Source: Oopsacas minuta (taxonomy: Eukaryota; Animalia; Porifera). From it: a stretch of DNA of 64,000 nucleotides. The stretch lies in the NCBI GenBank assembly GCA_024704765.1, contig JAKMXF010000334.1, positions 186,001 through 250,000 of the forward strand, written 5' to 3'. The notes below the pieces were generated by a model. It saw only the letters and a list, made by a program, of their open reading frames with translations, ran no database searches and was not told where the DNA came from. This document shows positions 12,401 to 53,249 of the stretch, piece by piece; positions within the stretch are counted from its first letter, which is position 1, and every line of letters begins with the position of its first letter. The position numbers and the translations under genes were made by a program.

Positions 12401-15400
12401 ATGGGAAATGTCAAAATGTTCATTTCCCAACGAGTGTCGCTATATGTAGGTTCCACACGGAGCAGAATGTTGCGTAAATAATATTTATGTGGGAAATTGT
12501 CATGTCAGAGGAGATAGACCACGTACTATATCCATGCAATAAAGTTGCATAGAATAACCGACAATCTAAGTTTGTATCGTGCGTAGTGGGGTTAAGAGAT
12601 CATGATGCTTCTATTCTAGAGATATTCATCTAATAATACGTCTTACAATCCACCCTTTTGTGAATATGTATTGAAATAACGTTTGTAAACATTGCTGAAT
12701 TACATATTTCATGCAAGGTTTTGCTTTAGGTTGAACTAACTAGTAAATACCTCAGTAGTCTTGCTATAGTATATTCAGCATTACCTTTTCCAGAGGGTAT
12801 CTACCTGTCTGATCCTCTATTCTGCTATATTTTATTGTGTTCATTTCTCTAAGTCCGTACTCACAGGATAGTGATCCTGTTGAAAGACGTTTCCATAAAT
12901 ATAATCATGGATTACTTTTTAAGTTGTCATGAACTATTCTCAGAATTCCACAATTCATCGGCACCAAAATATCTGTGTTCTAAAAACTCACGGTTCTAAT
13001 TGTAAATTTTTTAATCTTAGGCACCTATCGATGGTTGTCGCCAGGTTCCCCAGTCCGGCGAATAGTTGGGAATGTATGGATGAATTGATAAGAATTTCCC
13101 CAAGTGTGGGGGCATTTGACATCTAGACTAATAACTTTACATAATTAAAGATCTTTTTGTTCCTAGTTAGCCACAAGCAGGGTTTCATACAGGTCTCAGG
13201 ACCATCCGTTTAGGAATGGATTCTATTTTATGCGCCTGTAGGCGCGCCACATACACCTAGATAATACCCTGGCCACAAGGATACCCTACATATAAAGATA
13301 TGGAGATTTTACATTTGAAATGCCCCAGGGGTAGTAAATTTGAAAAATCCTCGTATCAAATCCCCACCTGTGACCCATATAAGCCCGGACTTGGGGAGGT
13401 GGTAACAACCTTTGATAGTTGCATTAACAGTACATTTTGGTGCAGAGATACCAACTTTCACGAATGGTGAAACGCTTTGTTAGCATCTATTTGACCAACA
13501 TGCTCATGCCATAATCATGCCAGAAATTCAATGATATTTCAAAACTCATAAAGTAAAATGAATTAATACAAACATACCAATAACATAGCATACAGGTAAA
13601 CCTAAATATGACATACTTCCCAGATGCGGCACAAGCAGTTACTCAGATGCGGAATCTCGGAGGTTTACATGTATGACAAGTCTAAGTCAAAAATCAAAAT
13701 TTTATGGAATAATGATCATCCATTTTGTATGCGTCTACTGATTAAGTTATGGGCCTCAGTCTTCATACTAATCTGTTAAGCTAGCCCTTCGAATACGAAT
13801 ACCATTTACCGAATACTAATCCAATATATTGATTAAATTTGATTGTCAACTTTAAACTTTGAGTCGTAAGTTTTAGTATTTTCAATAATAAATATCCAAT
13901 GTTAATCCAAATTTATTCTACTTTAGAAGATTCAAGTTACGCAGCAGAATCTGAGAAAGATGATGATTTAGAGTGAGTGAAATTATCTATACTATCTATA
14001 CAACTTGTAATATTCTTTGCTCTATTCCAAGGTTGAAACCGATCCAACTGAATATCAGTATTCATGAATACCTGTCAAGCCGAATACAAATACTGATACT
14101 ATTTGGTTCTCTAACCGAATATGAATACTGATACTATTTGGTTCTCTAACCGAATATGAATACTGATACTATTTGGTTCTCTAACCGAATATGAATACTG
14201 ATACTATTCGGTTCTCTAAGTCATGACATTATTTTAACTATGTCCTAGATTATTATTAATTGCGTATTGCCGTATAGATTTGACTCACAAGCATCAATAT
14301 CAGATTCTGAAAATGAAGCAAACGCGAATACAGAAGAGCAGAGAGCTGAACCAAAACCTAAAAAGATAGAAAGATCGAGGAAAGAGAGCAAAAGCAACAG
14401 CAAATCCAAGAAGAAAGAAAAAACAGAGAAATCTTCTAAAGTAAGTTTAGTTTTCTACACAACTGTATGTATATTTGTTTCATTGAAATCATGGTTATAA
14501 TAGTATATATATTGTCACTAATGTGCTGGATTGTTCCTCTAAATTCCCCCGCTGATGAGGTTGGTTTTAATACAAATCATAGTTTCAAATAGTCTCCTGA
14601 TGATGCAGTCGAATCTGGTTAGGTACTAAAGTTCCAGAGTGGGCACTTGTCTACCCAAAATTTATCATTAGTATAGACAATAGAGTGTAGTCTATGACTA
14701 AATAATATCAGTATATTAATTCATAGAAAGCTCTGAAAAAGAGATTTCCCTCACACACAATAAATACGCGAACAATAATTAATATAATGAAATAAAGTCA
14801 GTCAGCAGTGACCTGTAGTTGGAATTAGAATAAGTTGATCCAAATGCTTCTTAGTTCCTTGTAGACCACTACTACCTTTGAGATCCTCAAAGAATAACTC
14901 AATTATTTCCTCTGTTACGTGTGGACACACTACTATGTGATACATATGTCCAAGATGAATATCGCTATGACAAGCAAACAATCCTTTTTAATTATTCCTT
15001 CTGTTAGTGTAGGAATACTAACTATCAGAGAAGCTAGGTAAATAACGTCTCAATATCCATAAATCCTTTCTTGACGACGAAAAAGAGACAAACAATTGAG
15101 ATTTAATAATATAGATTTCAAGGTTTCCATATTTTTTAATTAGATGGTGTTTCCGGGGTGGGACCAAATTTCCAATTTCCGTGGACATCACGTATAATAT
15201 GTTGTATCAGTCCCTGCTGTATTAATATTATTCAGATTACTAATTATTTATTAAACACACACAGAGTTAATTATACGAAATTAAATAGCAAATAAATATT
15301 CATATTTGCTATGTACACACACAAAATTATGCAAGCGATTGAACTAGCACGTATATCATTACTGTTCCCTTCTTACAGAATGGATCTCTTATGACAGAAG

Positions 15401-18400
15401 CTATTGGTATAGAACAAATACGTTTATTCTGATTTACACTGTCCCATGGTGTTTCATAGAAATTCCTTGCCAACTCAATTTCATCTCCGTGGAAGTAGAG
15501 TGACTCATCTTCTCTGTCCTGGTTTACTAGCATTACGATTGATTTTCCTCTGAAGGGCCATTTCGCATTTTTATCCCCCCCGGATTTTAGTGTGCTTACT
15601 TTAACATGCGCTTTAGCATCTTCTATACTTATAGAACATTTGAATATGTAGCCTTCCAATGAGAATGTTGGACTCTCATATAAAGTAGTGTCTGAAGCAA
15701 ATCCTGATATTTTCCAGCGTAATCTTGAACCTGCGAGTGATGTCATGAATACGTTATTCAAATGACGTATTTTGTTACTAAGCTTATTATTCTGTTTTGT
15801 GAGTTCTTCAATCTGTGCAGACCTGTGTTTATCAACTTCTTCAAGTTGACATATCCTCTCCATGATATCAGTCTGTGTCGAGGCTATGTACTCGCTTAAT
15901 AACGCTGTGTGTAATTCATTGTTTATTCTCATATGATCCTTCACTTCATCTTTCTTCAGTTGAATGGCACTACAGCCATATTGTGCGTATGTACAAGGCA
16001 ATGACCTTTCTGAGCATTCAGTTTTTAAGTGGAACTCCATGTTAATTTTCTTCACCTGCATGCCGCATGAATTACAATCCATTTTTGTGTTTTCACATTC
16101 ATTAAGATGCTGTATTAACAGGGTAGGGCTTACCAGTTTATCACAGAATTCACAATTTACAGGTCTCATAGTACATTCAATGTTGATGTGTTGCAAAGCG
16201 CTTTTTCTCTGATGAATTACTCCACAGTCTAGAGAACATTCTATCTGATAGCAAGGACATTCATCTACATGCTGCGAAATTTCACATATCTTCCCATTCC
16301 AATCACATCCTCTTTTTTGTAATGGACATTTCACGTTAAGTTCTAGAACTGATTTCCTTGCAGCAACTAAGTTCTGATAAGGATTTTGTGGATTTTCAAT
16401 ACACATAAAGCAAACCTGTAATAAACCTTCATTCGTAGAGCAAGCCTCCCGCATAATGCCTTTACACTTGTTACAGGCTAAAAAGCTATCTTCTATTGGT
16501 GTGAGCTGTGTAGTGAGTAGCTCCCTCTTGAACCCATTGAATCCGTCCTCTGTTTGTATGTAGAGGAGTTTCTCTCTTACATCAGGTTTTTGCATTCAAG
16601 CTAAGAATAAAATACAATAGATTGTATCATATACTATTTTAATGCCTGTAATACAAGTACAGGTAAACCATATAAGGCGTATCTTATTCCACCGAATTCC
16701 TATGGATTAATACACTGTACCTAACCTCCGAAATGAGGCACAAGCGGTCTCCCGATAAAGCTACACGTTGGATTATTACCTGTACTGATAATTTACAATA
16801 TACAAATACTAAAAGCTCTTAAACTCAGTCAATACTGCTTATATCGTTAAACAAAACCCATCCGAAGTGCGAATTTTGAAATTTGCGGACAGTCTAGTAC
16901 CTTCGCGAAACAATGTAGATAACAATCACATGTAAGTAGAATTTGATGTGTCCGAATTTTAAAACCCAAATTAGTATCAAATTTACGGGTCTGACTGAAT
17001 GGTGGAATTTCTGAATTTTCGTAGAAATGACTGATTGGTGAAAGTAGTGGAATTTCTAAAAGTGACTGAATAGTTTAAAATTGCTTATAATATGCTGCTG
17101 TTATTCATTTGTGCTTGTTTTGTTACCCCATTACCTAATTCCATGTGGTTCCACAATTTATATTATAAGCAATTTTTCACCATTCAGTCAGACCCAAATT
17201 TACTGATGCTATATCCTGAGATTATTGTTAAAATATTAATTTTGTGTATATTACCTTTTTTAATATTCATTATCTATACCTATGACATTTGTGAATATAT
17301 CCAAGGTAAGCTTACCATGGCCTTACCTTTGTAGGTTATAATACCGTACATATGGGTAACTTGTATGTAATTACCCAGGACAATGATTCTCAACTAGTCT
17401 GCTTTGGAATACTTGTATATTTTAAGGGCTGCTAGGATTGGCTTAGAATACTTAAATCACACTAGCGCTTTATTGATATACCTCTGAGCAGCTGCAATTT
17501 ATAATCGCTATCTACACTTCGTGCCTTGGATTGGGCTTATAATAAATGTACAGTCGACAACTGTTAATTCGAATTCCAATTCGTATTAGTCGGACAAATG
17601 ACAACATGCTAACTCGAACAAATGTAGCGCCCCCAACAATATTATTTATTTGAATATATATACCGAATCTGATTTTCACACTTTGGAATTGATCATATGT
17701 AAATTTATTTGGTTTTTTAGTGTGCTTTCTATATACTACTATTTTTGAATACAGTATATGGTAAATAAATAGAAATTTACGTGAGACTTGTTCTTAAATC
17801 CCACATTTACTGTATGTGATTTTGAAATTCCAACAATATGACACTTACGTCATAATTTGTCTGTGTAAATTTCGTCCAAGACTCGAATCTGTCCGGCTTA
17901 GGCCTAAATATCCTTAAAACATCCCCGGGCCTTCCATTTTCTTCAATCAATTCAATTTATACAAATTACTTACATGCATATTTACACATTTGTAGAAAGC
18001 GAAGAAGAAGAAAGACCCTGACTGCCCTAAAAAGCCAGTGAGTGCATACATGATTTGGTTCAATGAACAGAGGAAGAACATAATGGAGAAATATGAGACT
18101 AATTTTATTGAGACTAGTAAAAAAGGAGGTGAACTGTGGGGCTCTATGACTGGAGACGAGAAACAGGTAATTGAATATAAAATTATACTGAGTAATACCA
18201 TTCAAGGAGCTATCATAAATATCTCCTACGTAATTATTCAGGCATTTACTACTCATGTGACGCTTGTGGCACAAGTTACTTAAATATAACTTTTTCAATA
18301 TACTCAAAATGTTTTATGATTTGAAGTTTGATACAACACCTTACAAACCAAGTAAGAATAACAAATCATATGTTCTTACAGGTTTATGTGAAAAAATATG

Positions 18401-33785: not shown

Positions 33786-34841
33786 ATGGCGAATACATAT
33801 TTCGATACCCCTTTAAACCTTTCTGAAACATTACTAGTTAGTCTATGTCGTGGGAGCTATGGGGGATTCGATCCAGATTTATTTGCTGAAAAGTATGAAG
33901 ATCATATATGCGCTATTTGTTTGGGTATTTTACGTAATCCAGTCTGTACTAAATGCAAGCATTTTTTCTGTGAATCATGTTTTGGCTGCATAAGGGATAA
34001 TGAGGACTGTGCTAGATGTCCGATAGATAGAAACAAGTTATTGCCTCATGAGTACTATATAGCCCGGACAACGCAGAAAGAGATAGAATCCAAACTTATT
34101 CTCAAGTGCCCATGGTCCAGTGAAAGTTGTAAATGGTCAGGGAATTTAAAACAGCTTGTCACGCATATAGAAGATGATTGTGAATACGCGTTTATTAAGT
34201 GTAGAGAGTGTCCAAAAGAGATTCGACGAAAATTTATGGACAAACACGAGATAGAACATTGGAGAAGTAGATGTAGAAACCTATTGAGTTCTATTAAAAA
34301 CCGCACAAGTCCAGTATGGTTTATACAGAAAGATACATGGACAATATTAAACCAATCAAGAAAAGTTCTAGATAATTTCGTAACTCCATTTTACTGGGCT
34401 ATACCGGGTGTGGAATCTCTAATAGGGAGAAGATGTATACTGTTCTCACCCCCTATTCTAACTGATTACTACGGATACAGGTATCAAGTACGGATTAATA
34501 TGGGTGGATACGGGGATGGATATGGGCGGTTTATTTCTGCATATTTGTACCTCATGAATGGCCCGAATGATAAATCACTGCGATGGCCATTTGCAGCTAA
34601 TTTTCAGCTGACTTTGTTGGATCAACGTTTGAAGGAAGAAGATAGAGGTCAACATTTCGCGAAAACATTACAATTCCTTTCGCACCCAGCTCTATTCAAC
34701 TCTCCATTAGCAGGAGAGTCTAGGAATACTGGACTTGGTTGGGGACGATTTGCATCGTTTCAATTGTTACAGGATAATTACTGTGTTGAGGATACGATTG
34801 TAGTTTGTGTGGAATTAACGACGAAGTTTCAACCTTCTTAA
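33786..34841 (+). CDS. RING-TRAF zinc finger-MATH protein (TRAF4/6-like), single exon
   Basis: Intact C3HC4 RING (CAICLGILRNPVCTKCKHFFCESC..CPID), CPWSSESCKWSG, MATH (LFSPPILTDYYGYRYQVRINMGG, ISAYLYLMNGPNDKSLRWPF, GLGWGRF). Confidence 0.92.
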   Translation: MANTYFDTPLNLSETLLVSLCRGSYGGFDPDLFAEKYEDHICAICLGILRNPVCTKCKHFFCESCFGCIRDNEDCARCPIDRNKLLPHEYYIARTTQKEIESKLILKCPWSSESCKWSGNLKQLVTHIEDDCEYAFIKCRECPKEIRRKFMDKHEIEHWRSRCRNLLSSIKNRTSPVWFIQKDTWTILNQSRKVLDNFVTPFYWAIPGVESLIGRRCILFSPPILTDYYGYRYQVRINMGGYGDGYGRFISAYLYLMNGPNDKSLRWPFAANFQLTLLDQRLKEEDRGQHFAKTLQFLSHPALFNSPLAGESRNTGLGWGRFASFQLLQDNYCVEDTIVVCVELTTKFQPS

Positions 34842-35908
34842 TTTGTGGGATAACTAAATGGGTAGTCATTATATTAGCTTACAATAGCTTGGAATTGTTC
34901 TTATCAATCGTACTCATCCGCCGTTCAATGCTAGTTCTGAATATTATTATTTACATAATGTATATTGGATAATGTGTGCAATACCTGGAACTTGCTATGC
35001 TATATAGTTGTTATTATTCTATTTAATCCAATAAATTAAAATCATTTGGATATTCATGCCGTTGGAGACGGTCCCGTTGGTCGGGTTCAATCGGACCAAT
35101 TTTACATTGGTTAGTGCAGTGAGTATAGGGAAATCGGATAAACTTAGCAGGGATAGCATAGACAGTATAGTGGATAATTATAACCTGATCAATACAAATA
35201 AATATCCCTGCTAACGCTTATAAGATGAACAGATATTTTGTTATCTGGTTAGTGTGGAAATTTTGTTGAAGTACATACTAGAGCAGTACAACCGACTCTT
35301 GTTACACTAAGACGCATAAGGAGTGAGGAATACAAACTTTGATTCCCCCAGCTTAAAATATGGCGAAATATATCGTACAAACAAACTCTGTGCTAATTGC
35401 TATGGTTTATTACAAGTGCTTCATATGCATTGTAGAGAATAGGATTTGTATATATGTGGAATTTGTCAAATGTTGATTTTCCAAATGAACATCGAATATT
35501 CTTCTTAGGATTCTATAGAGAAGTCCAGTGTCTTTGTAATTTGTATTTGATGTTGGCCAGGGCATTTTATAGGTCCAACGTTTAATTTGGAAAAATATTG
35601 GTCCGATACAATTTCGAAAATTCGTTTAAGGCCTTAATAGAATTCTATGATAGTGGGATTGGTCGATTTATCACAAAGGATTCAGATTTACGCTAATTTT
35701 ATTGTGAATGATACGTATTCTAAACAGAATGAGGGGCGATTAATGTGTTAAAGATAATTAGGTGTATTAATAAATATCTAATAGATAGAATTACATAAAA
35801 TATGAAATATAAAATTATAGAAAGTATAAACACTTAGAAGTGATAAATGTTGAGTAAATACTATCCTATAGCTATAAGTCCTAAATATCTACTAGTAGTT
35901 ATTTCGAA

Positions 35909-37729
35909 TCAGATCATAAAGAGAGAGAAGACAAATGCCAGAAATATAACTGACATTGTCACTTGGAGGGAACTGCCATCAGAAGTACCAAAAGTACCCT
36001 CGATACAAATTGCTGGGTCACAAGGGGAACCTTCTAGAGTAAATGAATTCGCATTACTGGCACCTTTGACAGAAACGTAAATTGAGTATGTTACATTTTC
36101 AGTATCTCTTCTTGTAATGTTCACATCTTCTGAGAGAGGAGATATCACAAGTTCTTTGTATGTATCAGAGGATGAAATCTCTAAATCATTGTCATACTCG
36201 TATGGATGCGGAGTAACTCTAGAAGCATACAAGAAAGTCAGTCCTATTTCGTCAACAACTACTATCATTAAGTTCATATTATCTTGAACTTCGAATTGAT
36301 AATATTGGAATTCATCCTGCAAGACAACTCCTATAATTATAGAATTTATCGGGATGGGTTGTGATTCATAACACGTAGTAGCTGTGAGGGTACTTGCAAA
36401 ATCACTCAAATCTGTAAATGAATCAAGTATATAAATATGAGGAGGGGGAGAGGGAGAAGCTATCACATTCAATTGATTAATGTCATACCCCCCGATGCCT
36501 ACGACATAGATTATGATATTACTATCTCTGACATTCATAGCTGGGATTTCTACCGAATCGCCAGCTTTACCATCGGTCAGGACAATTAAAATCTTTGGAA
36601 GCCCCAGTGTATCTGGACGGAGGCCATTTAGTTCAGTAAATTGATCACCTTGTGTTAAGTTTAACGCACTTCCTAATTGTGTACCTCCCCCGATCTTTGT
36701 GATGTTATCGATAGCGTTGTCATAATCCTCTTTACTCTTATAAGATGATAAATAGAAGACGGTTGTATAGAAGGAACCGAAAAGAGAAAGTCCAAATCGA
36801 GTTCCATCCTCATCAGCTAGGTCTTCATCAGAAAAAGCGTTGATAATTCGGCTAATAAAATCTAAAGCAAGCGAGAAATCACTACTGCTGATACTCCCAG
36901 ATTGATCCAAAAGAAATACTACATCCACAGATCGAGTGCATACCTCTAGGACAGCACGGATGATATCTGCTTCATTATTTCTTCTCTTAAGGTCACCCCT
37001 CTGCTGAATTTCGGGGTTATTATAGAAATTCTCTAACTCATTAATAGCACCCTCCCAATCATTTTTGATGACTAAATTCCAGAACTTAGGGTACTCAGGG
37101 TAAGCTTCCGGCGTACCAAACTGAAACCATACGTCAGAAATAGCAGTCCTTATACCTCTAGGAAGTGATGCGAATTCCGGAAGGCCTGATCCGCGCTCAG
37201 CGTTATAAGTCGTTTGTACACTTTCCACAATGAGGTCTTTCACCTTAGTAGTCAGGTCTTTCGCTTCATCTAATGTCAAGGCTAAAGGATTTTCAATAAT
37301 CGCACAAGCAGCATCGTTCTGTGTAAGACCGAAGTATGGTTCTAATTGATTAATTACTGTTGCTTCTACACTAATGTCAGTGAAGTACTCACCGTTCTTA
37401 GATCCTAGATCCACTCCTCCTCCGATAGTAACACCACTCGTTCCTAGAACTTCTCCGTCATCAGAGTTGATTGGCACATATCCGCATTTAGTAAGTCCTT
37501 CGTGACATGTAACGAATTCGTTGTATATGAGAGGTAGGTCAGTGGATGTACCCTCTGGTATTCCAGCTTTCCAGCTAGTTGGACAAGAAAGCATCTCCAA
37601 TTTACAATCCGTTGGAACACGGGGATTATTGATGTACAGACGAGGTTTGTAAGGGGTAGTACAAACGAGTGCTGTGCATACAGCAAGCATAGAGAAGAAG
37701 GTGTAGAAGAAAATCTTCAACATTGCCAA
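35909..37729 (-). CDS. Signal peptide + pesticin-like (T4-lysozyme fold) muramidase + VWA + PPC-like beta-sandwich + putative GPI signal, single exon
   Basis: 606 aa; HEG..GYVP..SGVTIGGGVDLG pesticin-type motif; VWA with MIDAS (FLLDQSGS, GGTQLG, LTDG); C-terminal GTSDGSS + hydrophobic tail with no cytoplasmic segment. Confidence 0.85.
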   Translation of the reverse strand: MAMLKIFFYTFFSMLAVCTALVCTTPYKPRLYINNPRVPTDCKLEMLSCPTSWKAGIPEGTSTDLPLIYNEFVTCHEGLTKCGYVPINSDDGEVLGTSGVTIGGGVDLGSKNGEYFTDISVEATVINQLEPYFGLTQNDAACAIIENPLALTLDEAKDLTTKVKDLIVESVQTTYNAERGSGLPEFASLPRGIRTAISDVWFQFGTPEAYPEYPKFWNLVIKNDWEGAINELENFYNNPEIQQRGDLKRRNNEADIIRAVLEVCTRSVDVVFLLDQSGSISSSDFSLALDFISRIINAFSDEDLADEDGTRFGLSLFGSFYTTVFYLSSYKSKEDYDNAIDNITKIGGGTQLGSALNLTQGDQFTELNGLRPDTLGLPKILIVLTDGKAGDSVEIPAMNVRDSNIIIYVVGIGGYDINQLNVIASPSPPPHIYILDSFTDLSDFASTLTATTCYESQPIPINSIIIGVVLQDEFQYYQFEVQDNMNLMIVVVDEIGLTFLYASRVTPHPYEYDNDLEISSSDTYKELVISPLSEDVNITRRDTENVTYSIYVSVKGASNANSFTLEGSPCDPAICIEGTFGTSDGSSLQVTMSVIFLAFVFSLFMI

Positions 37730-39200
37730 TGAAAATACAAGATTTGTATCAAATAATTAGATAATAGAATTCGAAAGTGTAACTGAGTAATGTATTGCAG
37801 TTACATGTTTATATTTATAACACACTATAAATGTCATCAATACCAAGATGTGTAGAGCATAAAGCGATTGAGCCCATAAGATTCCATTCCATTCCTTTAT
37901 TGAATACACAATACGTAACCATTACTATTACACATTTCATTCATGATTTACTACTGATTGATTCAATTAGTGTAAACTGGAACAATTCGTGACTGATTCT
38001 ATTGGTTAATCTGAGATGTATTAATTAATCCATTTTCCGAAAATTATTTCTGCCACGGAAAGTCGTTCTGGATAGATAATCCTAATTTAGAAAACATACA
38101 TTCCATGGAATCCATTAGATCAGTGGTTCCCAGCCTGGGGTCTATGTACCCCTTGGTGGTCCATAGGATCTGTTAAAATTGATATTGGGGTTCACGGGTA
38201 AAAAATTTGACACCCGCTACATTAAATGATAAGAATTCCAAAGATGGATTAAAGTAAGCAACACACACTAATTAAATACAGTTAGGACTATATTTGGTAT
38301 CACCTGTAAATTTAGGCTTTATGCATAGGCGGCGTGTCATGCATAGTGGAGGATCCGGGAATTGCTAGTGGGGAAATATCATCCAGCTGGGGGCTTTGGG
38401 GCGTACCCTGGGTGGAGCCCATGGAAGACAATTCTATTTTCATTTTCCAATCACATTAGTTGCCTTTCTACTGTCAGCTGTATGTAATGCTGAATACTCA
38501 TAAAGCTTGAAAAATTTCGCGATTTACAATGAACCTAAATTACATCATTGTGTAGTTACTGTATTACATATAATATTTGGTCTATATTAGCACAGGGTAA
38601 CATTCAAAGAAATTAGCTACGTATAAATATTGTTTCTAATTAGACAATGGTATGATAAGCTAATATGTGTTGTCTTGTTCATAATAATAGTATATCCAAC
38701 AGTTAGGGAAACTTTCATCCGTAGGTATATACCTGGGGTTAAGGTATTTTAATATGATATCGAGATATGGTGACCAGAAGAGTTTTTACCAAACCTGCAC
38801 ATTATCAGGTTGTCAGAAAAAATGCTGGACCTCCCTGGATAAAACTTAGGAAAAACTAAGTATGCTATAAAAAGTAACAGTTATAAATTATCAATAGATT
38901 TATTCATGTACGTACTATATGCTGTGAAGGAAGCAAAAAACTCGCGCCAAGATATGTAAATATAGTGACGTGTTTACTAAGGTGAAGAAATTGGACAGCA
39001 AAAAACACTGGATAAACCATATATAAGTGGACATAACCAATTTGCTTCAAATAAAGGGCAATGGTAACTGTAAGATTCGAACGAAGCGAGGATAAAATTT
39101 AATGTTTGCTATTCGAGCTAGTGTTTCTATGTATTGACATAATTTTCGATACCACTATGATTCAATATCAAGTATAATTATCCTGGTGGTATCCCTACAC

Positions 39201-39324
39201 CAGTGGTTCTCAACCTGGGGTCCGCAGCCCTAAAATGTTTTCGTTATGTTTATTGGCAGGGGTCCGCGAACCCCATAAAATGGACCAAAGAGGTCCGCAG
39301 AAGAAAAAAGGTTGAGGACCAATG
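39201..39324. mobile_element. 124-bp hAT (Charlie-like) MITE; related ends at about 10593-10711, 28970-28985 and 38121
   Basis: TIR CAGTGGTTCTCAACC / GGTTGAGGACCAATG; perfect 8-bp TSD CCCTACAC. Confidence 0.85.
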
Positions 39325-45949: not shown

Positions 45950-46276
45950 ATGGTTGTATTATCTATATTTAGCATGGTAGATCCTGAAACAGAATCTCAT
46001 AGAAGCATCTCTTCTCAGCCTGAACGTCCTTTTGATAGACTCCCGATAATTCCATCCATTTCCACTGACTTTTCCCCAGAAGATGAGATAACTACAGATT
46101 ACATGCTACATAACTTAATAAGGAAAGTTGAAAAAGAATGGCTATTCAATATAATTTTCATTATTCTTTTCATCCTAACATTTATATGCTTGTTTATATC
46201 TATTTTAATAGCTATTTGGGGAGACGAATGGTTTTCTAAAGTGAATTTCACGATAAATTGTGGATATACTAGTTGA
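45950..46276 (+). CDS. Small single-pass membrane protein of unknown function
   Basis: 108-aa ATG ORF with S/P/E-rich N-terminus and one strong hydrophobic segment (WLFNIIFIILFILTFICLFISILIAIW). No recognised family. Confidence 0.45.
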   Translation: MVVLSIFSMVDPETESHRSISSQPERPFDRLPIIPSISTDFSPEDEITTDYMLHNLIRKVEKEWLFNIIFIILFILTFICLFISILIAIWGDEWFSKVNFTINCGYTS

Positions 46277-46930
46277 TAATATATTATTCAAATGATATTG
46301 TTTTACCTTGTATTCTAAAGTAGACCTTAATAATCCGTACAGGGCATACAGCCCAATTCTACAGCGGATTAATACATACAGCGGATTAATACATACAGTA
46401 GAATTATATGTTGTTATGTACTGGGCTAAGATGTACAATCGGTTATTACCTCCTTTTCTCCAAAACGGTTTATCAATTCTTGTATAAAAATAAGAATATT
46501 CGAATATGATCAACTTGGGTTAGTACTTACTAATTTTTATTCTCCGAAGGGTTCTGTCTTGTCCGAGTTCTATTATAATACTATACTCCACATGTTGGCA
46601 GGCTTTTCATTGTTTTACAACATTCGCGAACCTGTAACACTCGATAAATAGTGTTACAATGCGACTGTAGCTAGCACTAATCCGAATTGTTTCATTAGTA
46701 CCGGGCTGCTTGAATTACGAGGGCAACTGTTTCCGTTTTATCTATCCATTCATGTTCTATCGATTACTTGCTTAACAAGCGAATAGTATCAGCTAGTGAG
46801 TACTCACGTAGAGTGTGTGTAATTTGTGAATATTCTAATTTCCATATTAGTATAATTATCAGTTTATCACTCAAGAATTACTCAGATGACGTAATCTGAA
46901 TTATAAAGAGAGCTAAGCTACTGATTGGTT

Positions 46931-47819
46931 NNNNNNNNNNNNNNNNNNNNNNNNNNNNNNNNNNNNNNNNNNNNNNNNNNNNNNNNNNNNNNNNNNNNNN
47001 NNNNNNNNNNNNNNNNNNNNNNNNNNNNNNNNNNNNNNNNNNNNNNNNNNNNNNNNNNNNNNNNNNNNNNNNNNNNNNNNNNNNNNNNNNNNNNNNNNNN
47101 NNNNNNNNNNNNNNNNNNNNNNNNNNNNNNNNNNNNNNNNNNNNNNNNNNNNNNNNNNNNNNNNNNNNNNNNNNNNNNNNNNNNNNNNNNNNNNNNNNNN
47201 NNNNNNNNNNNNNNNNNNNNNNNNNNNNNNNNNNNNNNNNNNNNNNNNNNNNNNNNNNNNNNNNNNNNNNNNNNNNNNNNNNNNNNNNNNNNNNNNNNNN
47301 NNNNNNNNNNNNNNNNNNNNNNNNNNNNNNNNNNNNNNNNNNNNNNNNNNNNNNNNNNNNNNNNNNNNNNNNNNNNNNNNNNNNNNNNNNNNNNNNNNNN
47401 NNNNNNNNNNNNNNNNNNNNNNNNNNNNNNNNNNNNNNNNNNNNNNNNNNNNNNNNNNNNNNNNNNNNNNNNNNNNNNNNNNNNNNNNNNNNNNNNNNNN
47501 NNNNNNNNNNNNNNNNNNNNNNNNNNNNNNNNNNNNNNNNNNNNNNNNNNNNNNNNNNNNNNNNNNNNNNNNNNNNNNNNNNNNNNNNNNNNNNNNNNNN
47601 NNNNNNNNNNNNNNNNNNNNNNNNNNNNNNNNNNNNNNNNNNNNNNNNNNNNNNNNNNNNNNNNNNNNNNNNNNNNNNNNNNNNNNNNNNNNNNNNNNNN
47701 NNNNNNNNNNNNNNNNNNNNNNNNNNNNNNNNNNNNNNNNNNNNNNNNNNNNNNNNNNNNNNNNNNNNNNNNNNNNNNNNNNNNNNNNNNNNNNNNNNNN
47801 NNNNNNNNNNNNNNNNNNN
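46931..47819. other. Assembly gap (N run)
   Basis: Run of N. Confidence 1.
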
Positions 47820-48671
47820 TGTGAGATTACTGTAGATCGTGTAGTAGACGCACACAAGGTAGAGACTGACAAGCATAAGTTTCGATTAGTCAGCATAACT
47901 TCAGATAATGGAGAATTACAATAACCTATTATCCACAGTTCTTAATCTTGTTGTTATTCCATGGAGTTGTATAATCACACTTATAATTTGAACTTTATAT
48001 ATTTTTCCAGTAATTGAACCGTGTCAGGACCCTCAGAGACCAATACAGTAGGCTCTCAATGATAAGTGTACCGTTGATATGTCTTACTCCTTACCGGCAA
48101 GGTATCCGATAAATATGGTTTTTCCCAAAATTGGAATCTATTATAGTACTCGAAAACCCTGACTATCCGTTCAAATGAAATTCCCAGCATCTTTTTGAAA
48201 TATGTTCCAAAATGTGTGAAAAATAGATTGATCATATGATATATCTGTGAATTTAAATACCCGCGGTGCAAATCTCCGACCCAAAATCTCTCTCTATATA
48301 TATCTAGTAGAATTCGGTTATTGACAATATTATTTTATTGTCAACCTATTTTCAAAATGTTCCCTTATTACGGCTGCGCTGATGGACGGAAGTCGCACAT
48401 CATAGATGTCATTAGGACATCTGATTCTCCCTATAGGGCCTGTGCTAAAATAGAACGTGTTAACAGTGTATAATATAATATCGGATACCGACAATTCGCA
48501 CCACGGCAATTCGCACCTAATTTGATTGGCCTACTGTATCCACTTGCCCAGCCTCAACAGATGCTCCTGGACTTTGAGAAGGGCCCGATTACCAGCTTTG
48601 AGCATGTCTGGCCTAACACAGTAGTGAAGTGCTGCTTCTTCCACCTCACACAGAATATCTGGCGACATGTG

Positions 48672-50301: not shown

Positions 50302-53249
50302 ATGTCGAAAGCAAAACCCATTCAAGTGGTAATACTCTCTTCGTTTTCTCTTCCTTCCAATACTGCATCAAGTGAAGATGTCCTGAGTCAGTGGGATCGT
50401 CACCATAAACATTATATTCTATCGCTAAGACAGTATTTATCTCAGAACCTGGATAGAAGTAATCAAATATTTTTAGATTTAGAATTGAAAGATAATCCGA
50501 ATTGGCATATTAATCTAATCGGTCCTGAATCTACAGTGATAATTATATTGAGTAGCGGGCTATTGGAATTCTATAATAAACCTGATAGACGGCCAATTAC
50601 TGATAATGATAGACACACTTCTCTTGTTGTAAATCTTATCAAAGGGCTGGATGCGAATCATAATTGTACCAAAAAATACTTTTTCGTGATATTTGAAGAG
50701 AATTTACTCTCGATAATTCCAGTTATATGGCAAGGTTCAATTTGTCACGTGAAATCTGAGACTGATCATAGAAAGGTAATGACAATAATAAAGGATGAAC
50801 CTCAAAGCCAGCAGACATTTTCCACTTCCTTTGAACCCCTATCAATGATATACAATGATGATCAGGCTAAATTTATCAATTATTGGAAGGCAATCTATAG
50901 AGAAGACAAATCACATACAAATTTGAGTATGTATTATATTGAGCAGAAACTCACAAAGCAAGTAACTGATGATTCTCCAGATAATGTAAGTAATACCGGT
51001 GGGAGTGATGAGTTGATGACTGATCAGCTGTATGGTGATGCAAATGACTTGATGAATAAAATGATTGTAATTCAAGGAGCTAATGGATGTGGGAAGTCTG
51101 CACTCGCACAGATGCTCTGCCATCGATGGGGTAAGGGAGAAAGTTTGAAAATGTTCAGAGCTCTTGTTTTCATTGAACTAAATGAGGATAATATTCAAAA
51201 GCCTATGATAGAATTGATGAGATTCATTCCACACGAATCTGCCGCCAAGAAGGAAATTATTCTTAACGGGCTATCTGCAACTCAGGATGTACTGTTCATA
51301 TTGGATGTTGAAAACTATCCTTGGAGAAAATGCAAAAATTTTAAGTCCACTGAAATCGGACAGCTATTACTTCACCAAAGAACAGAAAGTCTACTCGTAT
51401 TAACGAATCAACTTGCCAGTAACGAAGATGATAAACGAATAATCGATGAAGCTGATATCATCTATGAATTGCAGAGTTTTGATCAAGATCAACTCAAACA
51501 TTTTTTTTGGAAAAGGACTTGTCCTATGGATATGAAATGTTCAGAAATATTTCAAGAATTGTGTAAGCTTCCCCTCTATGCCGTGATGATCCCCAGGAGT
51601 GAGGAAGTTGTTAAACATACTAATCTCACCGCGTTTTGTAAGGGCATTGTTGTCCAAATTCTGGCTAAAACCTTCCCAAAAGTTTGTTTAGAATCACTCG
51701 AACAATTTCTGAAGGAAAATAATACATTTAAGAACATCTGTAATTTAGCTTGGGACCTTATAAATGACCAAACTAACACAATACCAATAACTGATGTAAG
51801 AGCTAAAAATATCAACAGACAGGAAGGTGGATTGGGATTCCTGGATTTTATCACCAAACCGAATGACAAAAAAATTTGCACAGATTTCCTAGTTTTCCGT
51901 CTGAAGACGATTCAACATTTTTTGGCAGCTCTTCATTTCGTATATACAGTATGCACCCCTGAAATAGGGAGGGACTTTCTATTGACGTTAATGTCAGACC
52001 ATTCTATTCACAATGTTTGGAGATTTGTGACAGGTTTATTGAATGATAAGAAAAAAATACATTCTTTATTGAAGTCTCTCGGGTCCAATCATGCACCTCC
52101 CAAGCTTCTCTACGTACAAGCCATTTCTGAGAGTGAGATGAAATTCGATGAAATGGACACAGAGCTCAAAGAGATAGTATCTACCTGGATAAATTCTTTT
52201 AATTGGGAGAAGATTTCTTTATATCCTAGCGATTGTTTGGCTATCATAAAAACCCTCAATTACCTCGGAGAAAAGGAAAAGCGAAGGATTTTAGAAGAAG
52301 TTAAAGAGCTAAATTTTTCAAATTGTAATCTGGGTAATGAAGGTATGTTTCATTAAATTGAATGTCTGTCTATGCTCACAAATGTTAAGCTTATTAATAT
52401 GGGAGGAAATCCAAACTTTTTGAATCCTTTATCCAGGAATGGTTGCGTTGGATATTTGAAAGAAATACTAAAGAATAATTCTCGTACTTTAAAGCGATTA
52501 TATCTTGGATCTTCTGGCCTAAACTTTACAGGATTGCGTATTTTGAAGCCGACCCTCCTTAAGTTGACAGATCTAACTGAATTAGATTTATCTAGAAATA
52601 GCCATCTGGATTCTAAGGGTTGGAGCTTATTTGCAGATATTCTAAAGAACCTCAAAAACAAAGAACTCTTGAAACTATTCTTAGCTGATAACAATATTGA
52701 TTCTAACAGTTTCATAAGTATCCTAGAACAACTGAAGAAGTACCCGTTTCTTAAATATTTGAATTTTTGTGGCAATCACATAACTTCAAAAATAATGGAC
52801 AGTTTGATAGAAGTTCTAATGAGAATTAACATTAGGAGATTATTCCTTTCAAACTGCAGAATCAATAACAGTGTATTTACAATTCTATTGAATTTTATCC
52901 GTGAGAATGAAGCAAAATTAGATTCTCTTGTTTCCCTCAGTTTAGCCTTGAATGAATTTGATAACAATATCGTTGGAAAATGATGGATTCTCTGAAACTT
53001 ACCAAAAAGTTGCAAACTTTAGTTTTGAACCACAACAAAATTGGCGATAATTCGTCAATGCAGATTCTTTCTGATAGCTTGAAAGACATGCCTGCTATTG
53101 GTGCTATATGCGTATCTCATTGTGGGATCCAAGAAGAGGGAGCGATTATATTATGCAGTAATTCTCATAATGTTTCTGTGGATTTAAGGAAAAATAATAT
53201 TAGGAAGGATTCTGAAAAGTTTAAAAAGTTTGGTCATACTCTAATATAG
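50302..53249 (+). CDS. NLR-type protein: SEFIR-like domain + NACHT + LRR; probable intron 52343-52436 and two apparent 1-bp deletions in the LRR region
   Basis: NACHT: IVIQGANGCGKS..HRWGKG..FRALVFIEL, LFILD, FRLKTIQHFLAAL, VWRFVTGLL; ribonuclease-inhibitor-type LRRs (ELNFSNCNLGNEG, LTELDLSRN, LFLADNNI, LQTLVLNHNKIG); N-terminal about 165 aa with SEFIR-like pattern. Confidence 0.85.

What the first reader, a model, noticed from the sequence alone, without database searches (positions are those of the whole stretch)
35909..37729. Putative GPI-anchored pesticin-like muramidase-VWA surface protein
Seen: signal peptide, HEG..GYVP..SGVTIGGGVDLG, intact VWA MIDAS, a PPC-like sandwich and a hydrophobic C-terminal tail, with no introns. 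Knowledge: pesticin C-terminal domains are T4-lysozyme-fold peptidoglycan hydrolases of bacteria and phage with an E..T..D triad in which T and D are 6 apart; here T-IGGGV-D has that spacing and the Glu lies 24 residues upstream. Inference: a horizontally acquired lysozyme domain grafted onto an animal adhesion (VWA) module and tethered to the cell surface, able to capture and lyse or trim bacteria in a filter feeder (feeding, defence or symbiont control).
Basis: partly seen in the sequence, partly recalled or inferred. Interest (0 to 1): 0.82.

Follow-up and report, generated by a model that had tools for sequence, protein, structure and literature searches.

The report
Membrane-tethered pesticin-type lysozyme-VWA protein of sponge
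A glass sponge gene encodes a probably cell-surface-anchored enzyme that joins a bacterial-type cell-wall-cutting lysozyme to an adhesion domain; it belongs to a large family shared with corals that I found described in no searchable paper, although recent literature says early-branching animals have only goose-type lysozymes.

Summary
Window 35909-37723 (minus strand) is an intact, intronless 604-aa gene of the glass sponge Oopsacas minuta. It encodes a signal-peptide-like N-terminus, a Cys-rich extension and a Pesticin/T4-lysozyme-fold muramidase with the Glu-Thr-Asp triad. These are followed by a VWA domain with a complete MIDAS, a PPC-like beta-sandwich and a GPI-signal-like hydrophobic tail. 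One public run shows RNA-like coverage confined to the gene, with no splice joints.

This is not a sponge-specific graft. At least 120 sequence clusters share the same architecture. The named ones are octocorals (often in tandem arrays) and Acropora. One relative lies on a contig that looks like another glass sponge. Divergent three-domain relatives occur in Foraminifera and in the holozoan Syssomonas. Bacterial pesticin-like muramidases are the outgroup at 33-38% identity, so any bacterial acquisition and the fusion are ancient.

My best reading is a membrane-tethered, possibly convertase-shed, bacteriolytic ecto-enzyme used in feeding or defence. Catalysis, the GPI anchor and the cell type are all untested. 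I found no paper describing animal pesticin-domain proteins.

The scan had noted this same stretch once before in an overlapping window (s1-239317), not on other DNA.

The parts
35909..37723 (-). Complete intronless CDS, 604 codons plus TGA stop at 35909-35911 (= P0001)
   Evidence: no joints in reads
37670..37723 (-). Signal-peptide-like N-terminus (aa 1-18: K3, hydrophobic core, C-T-A before the likely cleavage site)
   Evidence: hydropathy; low-pLDDT helix; heuristic only, no predictor was run
37532..37663 (-). Cys-rich N-terminal extension (aa 21-64: C21, C40, C47, SWK-G motif). It is shared with the coral, foram and Syssomonas relatives but not with bacterial or hemichordate pesticin domains
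36974..37531 (-). Pesticin-type (T4-lysozyme-fold) muramidase domain, aa 65-250
   Evidence: Pfam E 2.6e-29; PDB pesticin E 7e-14; model vs 4epf_A Z 20.9, rmsd 2.6, 189 aa
37409..37501 (-). Catalytic triad codons: E75 (37499-37501), T99 (37427-37429), D105 (37409-37411)
   Evidence: alignment to pesticin E178/T201/D207; residues defined in PMC9620997; family conservation 116/117, 110/117, 116/118; codons checked
36371..36940 (-). VWA domain, aa 262-451, bracketed by C262 and C451 (120/120 and 119/119 residues present), with a complete MIDAS (D273, S275, S277, T348, D384)
   Evidence: Pfam E 7e-40; collagen VI alpha3 N5 Z 26.3
35990..36370 (-). PPC-like / collagen-binding-domain-like beta-sandwich, aa 452-578, with conserved PHPY motif and the C568/C573 pair
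   Evidence: model pLDDT 87.4; 5sv5 Z 11.5 and Foldseek E 3.8e-4; sequence signal only faint
36101..36121 (-). Disordered loop inside the sandwich (aa 535-541, N-I-T-R-R-D) carrying a dibasic site; candidate proprotein-convertase cut
   Evidence: pLDDT < 50; a dibasic pair in 104 of 114 homologues, full R-x-K/R-R in 33; cleavage itself is inferred
35912..35989 (-). GPI-attachment-signal-like C-terminus (aa 579-604): small residues G-T-S-D-G-S-S, a short spacer, then a hydrophobic stretch of ~15-17 residues that ends the protein
   Evidence: 86 of 120 homologues have a hydrophobic extreme C-terminus (mean hydropathy of the last 15 residues > 1.5; many of the rest are truncated calls); a few carry a TM helix plus basic tail instead
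35795..35908 (-). Probable 3' UTR; RNA-like coverage ends at about 35795
   Evidence: adapter-ended contig at 35795 and the depth drop in run X4
37724..37819 (-). Probable 5' UTR and core promoter, with TATAAATA at 37812-37819, 89-96 nt upstream of the ATG
   Evidence: sequence; RNA-like depth in X4 falls from about 3e4 to 24 beyond 37819

Best explanation
This is a real, transcribed, single-exon gene of the glass sponge Oopsacas minuta. Its product enters the secretory pathway and ends up on the outer face of the membrane, most likely on a GPI anchor.

The chain has three folded modules:
1. A pesticin/T4-lysozyme-fold N-acetylmuramidase with an intact Glu75-Thr99-Asp105 triad. It would cut the glycan strands of bacterial peptidoglycan.
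2. A VWA domain with a complete metal-ion-dependent adhesion site. It would bind a ligand (bacterial surface, host matrix or a partner protein) through a bound divalent cation.
3. A PPC-like beta-sandwich acting as a stalk or a second binding module. Its disordered loop carries a dibasic site, conserved across the family, that could let a proprotein convertase nick or shed the enzyme.

Because it is tethered to the plasma membrane, the enzyme would be carried into phagosomes together with captured bacteria. There, or at the cell surface, it would degrade their walls for feeding or defence.

Shown here: the gene, its domains, the catalytic and MIDAS residues, family-wide conservation, RNA-like coverage, and the wide phyletic spread. 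Inferred: signal-peptide cleavage, the GPI anchor, catalysis, the VWA ligand, convertase processing, and the cellular role.

Evolution: the gene is one member of an old eukaryotic Pesticin-VWA-sandwich family (glass sponges, anthozoans, Foraminifera, Syssomonas). The family's lysozyme domain is nested among bacterial pesticin-like muramidases, so a bacterial acquisition and the fusion happened once, long before this sponge.
For: Gene and host:
- ORF and gene call.
- Contig JAKMXF010000334.1 is Oopsacas minuta.
- Animal neighbours include TRAF-like, NHL, galactosyltransferase and Mnd1 genes.
- DNA-like contigs of three runs span the gene and its flanks.

Domains:
- Pfam hits and PDB sequence hits.
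- AlphaFold2 model with pLDDT 88.4 and pTM 0.84.
- Pesticin 4epf_A Z 20.9 and collagen VI VWA Z 26.3.
- PPC domain 5sv5 Z 11.5 and Foldseek E 3.8e-4.

Active sites:
- The triad aligns with pesticin E178/T201/D207, the residues shown by mutation to be the active site (PMC9620997).
- Across 120 homologues the triad residues are kept in 116/117, 110/117 and 116/118, and the MIDAS residues in 115-120 of 120.

Anchoring:
- Hydrophobic extreme C-terminus in 86/120 homologues. Some paralogues replace it with a TM helix plus a basic tail, which argues that membrane tethering is the selected property.

Expression:
- Run X4 has summed depth of 6e4-1.8e5 only between about 35857 and 37819, against 0-24 in the flanks. 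A contig ends in adapter at 35795, and there are no joints in the gene.

Family and origin:
-.
Against: - No enzymatic, localisation or proteomic data exist.
- No dedicated signal-peptide or GPI predictor was available, so both calls are rule-of-thumb.
- Pesticin-type enzymes cannot reach the peptidoglycan of intact Gram-negative cells without help, so lysis would need partner factors or a phagosomal setting.
- The dibasic site of the sponge copy is only R-R, not a full furin motif.
- Run X4 is not on record as RNA, and contig depth is a poor measure of expression (tool caveat).
- The closest glass-sponge-like relative (P0121, locus L016) lacks the VWA, sandwich and anchor. The tethered format is therefore not obligatory.
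- O. minuta is described as a low-microbial-abundance sponge dominated by an archaeal symbiont that has no peptidoglycan (my own knowledge plus the data statement of PMC10280926). 'Symbiont control' is therefore not favoured.
Confidence: 0.6

Rival explanations
1. Peptidoglycan sensor or scavenger rather than killer. The tethered muramidase trims or holds peptidoglycan at the cell surface, either to generate muropeptide signals for a co-receptor or intracellular NLRs, or to remove them and damp immune activation, as catalytic PGRPs do in insects.
For: - There is no cytoplasmic domain, so any signalling would need a partner. A VWA with MIDAS is a typical protein-protein docking module.
- Hemichordates pair a pesticin domain with a PGRP-type Amidase_2 domain.
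Against: - Near-perfect conservation of the full catalytic triad fits an enzyme but does not separate killing from trimming.
- The very strong RNA-like coverage and the tandem expansions in octocorals look more like an effector or digestive enzyme than a receptor.
- No signalling partner is identified.
Confidence: 0.2
2. Extracellular-matrix or skeletal protein. The VWA and PPC/collagen-binding-like modules anchor the protein in matrix. The lysozyme-fold domain acts on, or merely binds, an endogenous GlcNAc polymer such as chitin, which is reported in glass-sponge skeletons (my own knowledge).
For: - The best VWA matches are matrix proteins: collagen VI alpha3 and mussel byssus PTMP1.
- The C-terminal fold matches the collagen-binding domains of clostridial collagenases at Z 10.3-10.7.
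- Automatic names of the coral homologues are collagen-, matrilin- and vitrin-like.
Against: - The pesticin family is documented only as a peptidoglycan muramidase (PMC9620997 and PMC9927483).
- The membrane tail is conserved, which is odd for a matrix component.
- Bacterivorous or phagotrophic protists without such skeletons carry the same three-domain protein.
Confidence: 0.1
3. Secreted soluble lysozyme. The hydrophobic tail only serves transient anchoring, and cleavage at the dibasic loop releases the muramidase-VWA part into the water-canal lumen or mesohyl.
For: - A dibasic motif in a disordered loop is conserved in 104 of 114 homologues.
- A pesticin-only secreted relative exists in a glass-sponge-like genome.
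Against: - The loop lies inside the beta-sandwich, between strands, so a cut need not dissociate the halves.
- The sponge copy has only R-R.
- Anchors are conserved, and in some paralogues they are replaced by true TM segments.
Confidence: 0.08
4. Artefact: bacterial contamination of the assembly, or a very recent bacterium-to-sponge transfer.
For: The Pesticin domain is overwhelmingly bacterial: 1977 representatives at E < 1e-3, mostly short bacterial-type proteins.
Against: - The gene sits inside a 282-kb contig among animal genes, with flank GC of 34.5%.
- It has a TATA box and RNA-like coverage.
- Independent DNA-like contigs bridge the gene to its neighbours.
- The best bacterial identity is only 33-38% over the domain.
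- The VWA and sandwich domains occur only on the eukaryote side of the tree.
Confidence: 0.02

Closest known systems
C-terminal muramidase domain of Yersinia pestis pesticin, and pesticin-domain T6SS effectors (Vibrio fluvialis TssI2, V. cholerae VgrG3cp)
   Same: Same Pfam family (PF16754), same T4-lysozyme-like fold (4epf_A Z 20.9, 26% identity over 189 aligned residues) and the same Glu-Thr-Asp triad spacing.
   Different: - The sponge protein lacks the receptor-binding and translocation part of the bacteriocin; only chain residues 177-336 align.
- It lacks any VgrG or T6SS carrier.
- Instead it has a eukaryotic signal peptide, a Cys-rich extension, a VWA, a PPC-like domain and a membrane-anchor signal.
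- It is a host-encoded ecto-protein, not a toxin delivered between bacteria.
Uncharacterised anthozoan Pesticin-VWA proteins (e.g. Paramuricea clavata 'pesticin domain' and 'collagen alpha-6(VI) chain-like', Dendronephthya gigantea 'vitrin-like', Xenia LOC124443411, Acropora muricata uncharacterised protein)
   Same: Same full-length architecture at 42-54% identity over 92-100% of the length. They share the same Cys pattern, triad, MIDAS, PHPY motif, dibasic loop and hydrophobic tail, and they are also single uninterrupted ORFs in the contigs examined.
   Different: - Different phylum. Octocorals carry many copies, partly in tandem arrays (two copies 2.2 kb apart in locus L019, starts 4 kb apart; up to 5-6 clusters per contig), while only one copy was seen for O. 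minuta.
- The sponge copy belongs to a separate, well-supported clade.
- None of these has been studied experimentally, as far as the paper library shows.
Phage-type (T4-like, GH24) lysozymes co-opted by bivalves through horizontal transfer (PMC5303276)
   Same: An animal host uses a lysozyme of the T4 superfold with bacterial or phage ancestry; a precedent for a domesticated foreign muramidase in a filter feeder.
   Different: - Different Pfam family: no Phage_lysozyme hit here at E <= 1.
- Those are stand-alone enzymes, not fusion proteins.
- That transfer is restricted to two bivalve subclasses, whereas this family spans sponges, cnidarians and protists.
Goose-type (GH23) lysozymes of early-branching animals, e.g. 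placozoan PLys (PMC12855814)
   Same: A lysozyme of probable bacterial origin with an extra N-terminal Cys-rich part, proposed to serve digestion of bacteria in a non-bilaterian.
   Different: A different glycoside-hydrolase family and fold subtype, and it is soluble. That paper states that early-branching animals lack every other lysozyme family apart from one i-type report, which the present family contradicts.
Hemichordate pesticin-domain proteins (Saccoglossus, Glandiceps, Ptychodera)
   Same: Animal proteins with PF16754 domains.
   Different: - Other architectures: 3-4 tandem Pesticin domains, Pesticin+WSC, Pesticin+Lipase+WSC, Pesticin+Amidase_2, VWA7_N+Pesticin+VWA_4.
- They lack the Cys-rich extension.
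- In the careful tree they fall with the bacterial side of a 100/99 split. Union with the sponge and coral family is only weakly supported at 69/86.

Membership tests
Pesticin C-terminal-like muramidase (Pfam PF16754; T4-lysozyme superfold) | Profile match above the curated threshold | tested here: met
   102.6 bits against a cut-off of 25.8, covering profile positions 4-156 of 156
Pesticin C-terminal-like muramidase (Pfam PF16754; T4-lysozyme superfold) | T4-lysozyme-like fold | tested here: met
   AlphaFold2 model (pLDDT about 90-97 in this region) vs pesticin 4epf_A: Z 20.9, rmsd 2.6 A, 189 residues
Pesticin C-terminal-like muramidase (Pfam PF16754; T4-lysozyme superfold) | Catalytic Glu, Thr and Asp (pesticin E178, T201, D207) | tested here: met
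   E75, T99 and D105 align to them; residues defined by mutagenesis per PMC9620997; conserved across the family
Pesticin C-terminal-like muramidase (Pfam PF16754; T4-lysozyme superfold) | Hydrolysis of the MurNAc-GlcNAc bond of peptidoglycan | not testable with these tools
   Needs recombinant protein and a peptidoglycan digestion assay
Pesticin bacteriocin (whole protein) | N-terminal receptor-binding (FyuA) and translocation domains | tested here: not met
   Only pesticin residues 177-336 align; the N-terminus here is a signal peptide plus a Cys-rich extension
VWA domain with MIDAS (PF00092; integrin I-domain / collagen VI type) | Profile match and Rossmann-like VWA fold | tested here: met
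   137.5 bits against a cut-off of 23.8; collagen VI alpha3 N5 Z 26.3, rmsd 2.2, 192 of 193 residues
VWA domain with MIDAS (PF00092; integrin I-domain / collagen VI type) | Complete MIDAS: D-x-S-x-S, then Thr, then Asp | tested here: met
   D273-Q-S275-G-S277, T348 and D384 align with the alphaL I-domain D-G-S-M-S motif, its Thr and its Asp (alphaL numbering D137, S139, S141, T206, D239 from my own knowledge); codons checked; family conservation 115-120 of 120
VWA domain with MIDAS (PF00092; integrin I-domain / collagen VI type) | Metal-dependent ligand binding | not testable with these tools
   The ligand is unknown
Bacterial pre-peptidase C-terminal (PPC, PF04151) / collagenase collagen-binding domain | Profile match above the threshold | tested here: not met
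   No PPC hit for the sponge sequence. Only 2 of 25 family members reach E 0.13. The family profile against PDB finds only 5sv5, at E 0.25
Bacterial pre-peptidase C-terminal (PPC, PF04151) / collagenase collagen-binding domain | Beta-sandwich (jelly-roll) fold of PPC/CBD | tested here: met
   5sv5_A Z 11.5, rmsd 2.6, 100 of 105 residues; Foldseek E 3.8e-4, TM 0.75 by target; ColG CBD Z 10.7. Unrelated sandwiches (SID1, PliG, GOLD) score Z 9.3-10.7, so this is a fold-level likeness only
GPI-anchored surface proteins | N-terminal signal peptide | tested here: inconclusive
   Classic n/h/c pattern by eye and by hydropathy; no predictor was available
GPI-anchored surface proteins | C-terminal signal: small omega-region residues, a polar spacer, and a terminal hydrophobic stretch with nothing after it | tested here: met
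   G579-T-S-D-G-S-S, a short spacer, then about 15-17 hydrophobic residues ending the chain. The pattern recurs in most homologues; a minority have a TM helix plus a basic tail. This is a rule-of-thumb test only
GPI-anchored surface proteins | Release by PI-PLC or lipid-anchor mass | not testable with these tools
   Experiment needed
T4-type phage lysozyme (PF00959, GH24) as co-opted by bivalves | Profile match to Phage_lysozyme | tested here: not met
   Not among the Pfam hits at E <= 1. Some JGI records label homologues 'GH24 family phage-related lysozyme' automatically

The most novel reading that the evidence does not exclude
The Pesticin-VWA-sandwich proteins are an overlooked, pre-metazoan family of membrane-tethered lysozymes that arose from one ancient bacterial acquisition. 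They would be a major bacteriolytic enzyme of glass sponges and octocorals, where they have expanded into tandem arrays. Tethering lets a phagotroph carry the enzyme into the phagosome with its prey. If so, the current view that early-branching animals possess only goose-type lysozymes (PMC12855814) is wrong, and a second, older lysozyme system links protist phagotrophy to animal feeding and immunity.
Probability: 0.35. Interest if true: 0.75.

Novelty: new variant of a known kind. Interest (0 to 1): 0.6.

Why it matters
Lysozymes are central to how animals eat and fight bacteria. A 2026 study states that sponges, cnidarians and placozoans have only goose-type lysozymes, apart from one doubtful i-type report (PMC12855814). 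Here is a second lysozyme family of the pesticin/T4 fold:
- It is intact and apparently strongly transcribed in a glass sponge.
- It is expanded in octocorals.
- It has relatives in Foraminifera and a unicellular relative of animals.

Its format is unlike any characterised animal lysozyme: a catalytic domain fused to a MIDAS adhesion domain and a membrane anchor. This suggests a concrete, testable mechanism, a surface-bound enzyme that travels with prey into the phagosome.

It also offers a dated example of a bacterial weapon domain domesticated by eukaryotes. It gives coral and sponge immunologists a new effector gene family to follow in expression and disease studies.

Tried and rejected
1. 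Whole-model Foldseek against PDB returned only VWA hits. The lysozyme match appeared only with the exhaustive aligner, and the C-terminal domain had to be folded alone.
2. A domain-only word search found only fragments of the same family and no bacteria. Bacterial relatives needed pattern and profile searches.
3. Taxon labels for the unlabelled clade that holds the sponge copy could not be obtained.
   - Cluster look-ups gave no names, and the Atlas gave only 'Cnidaria' for one cluster.
   - No synteny with the window was found within +/-10 kb of loci L001 and L015-L019.
   - The accession search found no paper for GCA_029782515 / JARPSL.
   - Only L016 could be tied to glass sponges, through a neighbouring DUF2039 gene whose only named relative is O. 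minuta at 65% identity.
   - GC content (42-46% in L015-L018 against 35% here) and ORF density were noted but are not decisive.
4. The run search found no run on record as RNA. Expression rests on the RNA-like profile of one unlabelled run.
5. NCBIfam gave nothing useful.
6. Literature searches combining pesticin with coral, cnidarian terms, sponge, metazoa, HGT or GH24 found no description of animal pesticin-domain proteins. The O. minuta and Aphrocallistes genome papers mention no lysozyme, pesticin or horizontal transfer.
7. Recent HGT or contamination was rejected (see rivals).
8. The sponge-specific fusion idea was rejected.
Full report
OBSERVATION. The open frame reported at 35909-37729 (minus strand) is there. 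The ORF lister starts it at a TTG. The ATG two codons later (37723) gives 604 residues, identical to the public gene call for this contig.
- The N-terminus is signal-peptide-like.
- The motifs HEG, GYVP and SGVTIGGGVDLG lie inside a strong Pfam Pesticin match: E 2.6e-29, 102.6 bits against a cut-off of 25.8.
- There is a VWA match at E 7e-40.
- A C-terminal beta domain is followed by a hydrophobic tail that ends the protein.
- The frame is uninterrupted.
I verified the codons of all key residues directly.

WHOSE GENE. An exact look-up places the gene on GCA_024704765.1, contig JAKMXF010000334.1 (282,663 bp), at 220909-224723. JAKMXF is the whole-genome project of the glass sponge Oopsacas minuta (PMC10280926). 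Earlier scan notes had said so; this is my own check. The neighbours are animal genes: two TRAF-like RING/zf-TRAF/MATH proteins, an NHL propeller, a galactosyltransferase and Mnd1. The CDS has 40.1% GC against 34.5% in the flanks, which is normal for coding sequence in this genome. DNA-like contigs of three runs bridge the gene and both flanks. Contamination is therefore excluded.

STRUCTURE. An AlphaFold2 model built on 51 homologues is confident (pLDDT 88.4, pTM 0.84).
- Residues 57-260 superpose on Yersinia pesticin: 4epf_A, Z 20.9, rmsd 2.6 A, 189 residues, 26% identity.
- Residues 263-479 superpose on the collagen VI alpha3 N5 VWA domain at Z 26.3.
- In the sequence alignment to pesticin, E75, T99 and D105 fall on E178, T201 and D207. 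Mutational work identifies these three as the active site (PMC9620997).
- The MIDAS is complete: D273-x-S275-x-S277, T348, D384.
- The C-terminal domain, folded alone (pLDDT 87.4), is a beta-sandwich. Its best match by two methods is the pre-peptidase C-terminal domain of the Bacillus anthracis collagenase: 5sv5, Z 11.5, Foldseek E 3.8e-4. The collagen-binding domains of clostridial collagenases follow.
- At sequence level this likeness is only faint, and other sandwiches score nearly as well. 'PPC-like fold' is justified; membership of the PPC family is not.

A FAMILY, NOT A ONE-OFF. A word-based search returned 141 proteins, the best 120 of which were listed, essentially all with the same Pesticin+VWA architecture. 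They show 42-56% identity, mostly over 90-100% of the length.
- Every named hit is an anthozoan: Paramuricea clavata (many copies), Dendronephthya gigantea, Xenia sp. and Acropora muricata.
- Many unnamed hits share a contig, and locus L019 shows two copies 2.2 kb apart (starts 4 kb apart), so these are tandem arrays.
- The residues that matter are almost invariant across 120 homologues: catalytic Glu 116/117, Thr 110/117, Asp 116/118; MIDAS residues 115-120 of 120; ten cysteines, including the C262/C451 pair that brackets the VWA.
- 86 of the 120 homologues have a hydrophobic extreme C-terminus (mean hydropathy of the last 15 residues > 1.5), in most preceded by small residues.
- A few paralogues instead have a transmembrane helix followed by a short basic tail, for example tails ending W-R-K-C-K-K or R-R-I-Y-K-K.
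- Swapping one kind of anchor for another argues that membrane tethering itself is under selection.

The only disordered loop of the sandwich (aa 535-541 here, pLDDT < 50) carries a dibasic pair in 104 of 114 homologues and a full R-x-K/R-R motif in 33. This is a candidate proprotein-convertase site. The sponge copy has only R-R.

WIDER RELATIVES AND ORIGIN. A profile of the lysozyme domain found 1977 representatives at E < 1e-3.
- After the family itself, scores drop sharply to a broad set of mostly short proteins that match only the core of the profile, without the Cys-rich N-terminal extension.
- Named examples of that set are bacterial: 'pesticin C-terminus-like muramidase' of Acetobacter, and Pectobacterium, Iodidimonas, Thalassobaculum, Marivibrio and a Verrucomicrobia genome at 33-38% identity.
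- Other eukaryotes also appear. Hemichordates have quite different architectures: 3-4 tandem Pesticin domains, or Pesticin with WSC, Lipase, Amidase_2 or VWA_4.
- The Foraminifera Bolivina and Nonionella and the holozoan Syssomonas have Pesticin+VWA.
- HMMs of the family's VWA and C-terminal domains hit only proteins on the family side: the foram and Syssomonas proteins and a few unlabelled ones. No bacterial-type representative was hit.
- One Bolivina protein even ends in a hydrophobic tail.

TREES. In a careful maximum-likelihood tree of the lysozyme domain, a 100/99 branch separates the Pesticin-VWA group (family, forams, Syssomonas) from bacteria plus hemichordates. In the best tree all eukaryote sequences lie on one side of a branch, but with weak support of 69/86. 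The fusion therefore arose once among eukaryotes. The lysozyme domain has bacterial affinities. Whether hemichordates share that acquisition is open.

WHERE THE SPONGE COPY SITS. In a full-length tree the Oopsacas protein pairs with P0121 (100/96). It then joins P0004/P0008 (100/98), inside an 18-sequence clade of unlabelled sequences (100/96) that excludes every labelled cnidarian.
- P0121 lies on a 279-kb contig. A neighbouring DUF2039 gene on that contig has O. minuta as its only named relative, at 65% identity. That contig is thus probably another glass sponge.
- There the gene encodes only a signal peptide plus the lysozyme domain, 255 aa.
- I could not name the organisms behind the other unlabelled contigs.
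- The topology fits old vertical descent in sponges and cnidarians with many losses elsewhere. It does not fit a recent transfer into this sponge.

EXPRESSION. No run is on record as RNA. Of four runs from one sample, three behave like DNA, with flat depth and contigs spanning genes and spacers. The fourth (X4) behaves differently:
- Its summed depth is 6e4-1.8e5 only between about 35857 and 37819, and 0-24 on both sides.
- One of its contigs ends in sequencing adapter at 35795, 114 nt past the stop codon.
- The neighbouring convergent TRAF-like gene likewise ends in adapter at 34923.
- No joint lies inside the gene.
This is the pattern of an RNA library with a strongly represented, unspliced transcript. 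Its 5' limit fits a TATAAATA box at 37812-37819. The tool warns that contig depth is a poor measure of level, so I claim transcription, not rank.

MECHANISM. Established knowledge covers the pesticin domain (a periplasm-acting N-acetylmuramidase), MIDAS VWA domains (cation-dependent ligand binding) and C-terminal GPI signals. Putting these together, the best-supported reading is a membrane-tethered bacteriolytic ecto-enzyme that binds something through its VWA, possibly nicked or shed at the dibasic loop. A plasma-membrane tether would deliver the enzyme into phagosomes with captured bacteria. That would also get round the inability of this enzyme class to pass an intact outer membrane on its own. 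The occurrence of the same protein in phagotrophic protists, a bacterivorous sponge and suspension-feeding corals fits a feeding or defence role. Catalysis, anchor, ligand, processing and cell type are all inferred. Rivals are a peptidoglycan sensor or scavenger, a matrix or chitin-related protein, and a shed soluble enzyme; they are listed with their tests.

COMPARISON WITH WHAT IS KNOWN. The protein is a member of the Pesticin muramidase domain family and of the MIDAS VWA family; all testable defining features were met. It is not a pesticin bacteriocin, since it has no receptor or translocation part. It is not a demonstrable PPC family member and not a T4/GH24 Phage_lysozyme family member.
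- The nearest precedents for a domesticated foreign lysozyme in animals are the bivalve phage-type lysozymes (PMC5303276) and the goose-type lysozymes of early-branching animals (PMC12855814).
- The latter paper states that early-branching animals lack every other lysozyme family, which this family contradicts.
- I found no paper that mentions pesticin domains in sponges, corals or animals generally. The two glass-sponge genome papers are silent on it.
- Databases, however, already hold the coral proteins under automatic names, one of them 'pesticin domain'.

VERDICT. The gene is a new, intact, transcribed glass-sponge member of a widespread Pesticin-VWA-sandwich surface-protein family for which I found no description. 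The format, a tethered adhesion-domain lysozyme, is a new variant of the known theme of animal lysozymes with bacterial ancestry. Interest is 0.6. It is not a sponge invention and the domains are individually well known. But the family fills a stated gap in early-animal lysozyme biology and suggests a clear, testable mechanism.

Noticed in passing
window 33786-34841 (+), 15327-16595 (-), 50302-53249 (+): The lysozyme-VWA gene lies in a stretch rich in immune-type genes: two TRAF-like RING/zf-TRAF/MATH genes and the NACHT-LRR gene noted by an earlier agent. This may be an immune gene neighbourhood or just the density of such families in this genome.
   Followed up: partly
window 36101-36121 (aa 535-541), and alignment A3: A conserved dibasic or furin-like motif sits in the one disordered loop of the C-terminal sandwich, in 104 of 114 family members. 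It is a possible convertase processing or shedding site within a folded domain.
   Followed up: partly
L016:10001-10768 with neighbours 9062-9766 and 10946-11674: On a probable second glass-sponge contig, the closest relative (63% identity in BLASTP; 62-65% in the tree alignments) is a secreted lysozyme-domain-only protein of 255 aa. It has lost the conserved Cys of the A-A-C-A motif. It is flanked by two paralogous secreted proteins of 234 and 242 aa with no Pfam hit for the one scanned.
   Followed up: partly
P0144, P0145, P0157, P0158, P0162 (hemichordates): Saccoglossus, Glandiceps and Ptychodera encode pesticin domains in unusual combinations: 3-4 tandem copies, or fusions with WSC, pancreatic-type Lipase, PGRP-type Amidase_2, or VWA7_N plus VWA_4 plus a hemicentin-like domain. 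This is a second, apparently unstudied set of animal pesticin-domain proteins.
   Followed up: partly
P0155, P0159, P0160 (Bolivina, Nonionella), P0214/P0294 (Syssomonas): Transcriptome proteins of two benthic Foraminifera and of a unicellular relative of animals carry the same Pesticin + VWA + C-terminal sandwich order, and one has a hydrophobic tail. They are very divergent, so simple contamination by coral or sponge RNA is unlikely, but contamination by another eukaryote was not excluded.
   Followed up: partly
window 46001-48000: A 2-kb block with only 18.5% GC carries long overlapping ORFs on both strands (46878-47896). It is probably an AT-rich low-complexity repeat, not genes.
   Followed up: no
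window 39201-39298: All four runs pile up many short, high-depth contigs with diverse loose ends here, and two runs show a 44-base skip at 39225-39270 with non-canonical ends (AG..GA). This looks like a dispersed short repeat, not an intron.
   Followed up: no
L019:10001-11812 and 14012-15823: An octocoral-type contig (36% GC) holds two 603-aa family members in tandem in the same orientation, 2.2 kb apart (starts 4 kb apart). Other contigs hold 5-6 clusters, which points to lineage-specific expansion.
   Followed up: partly
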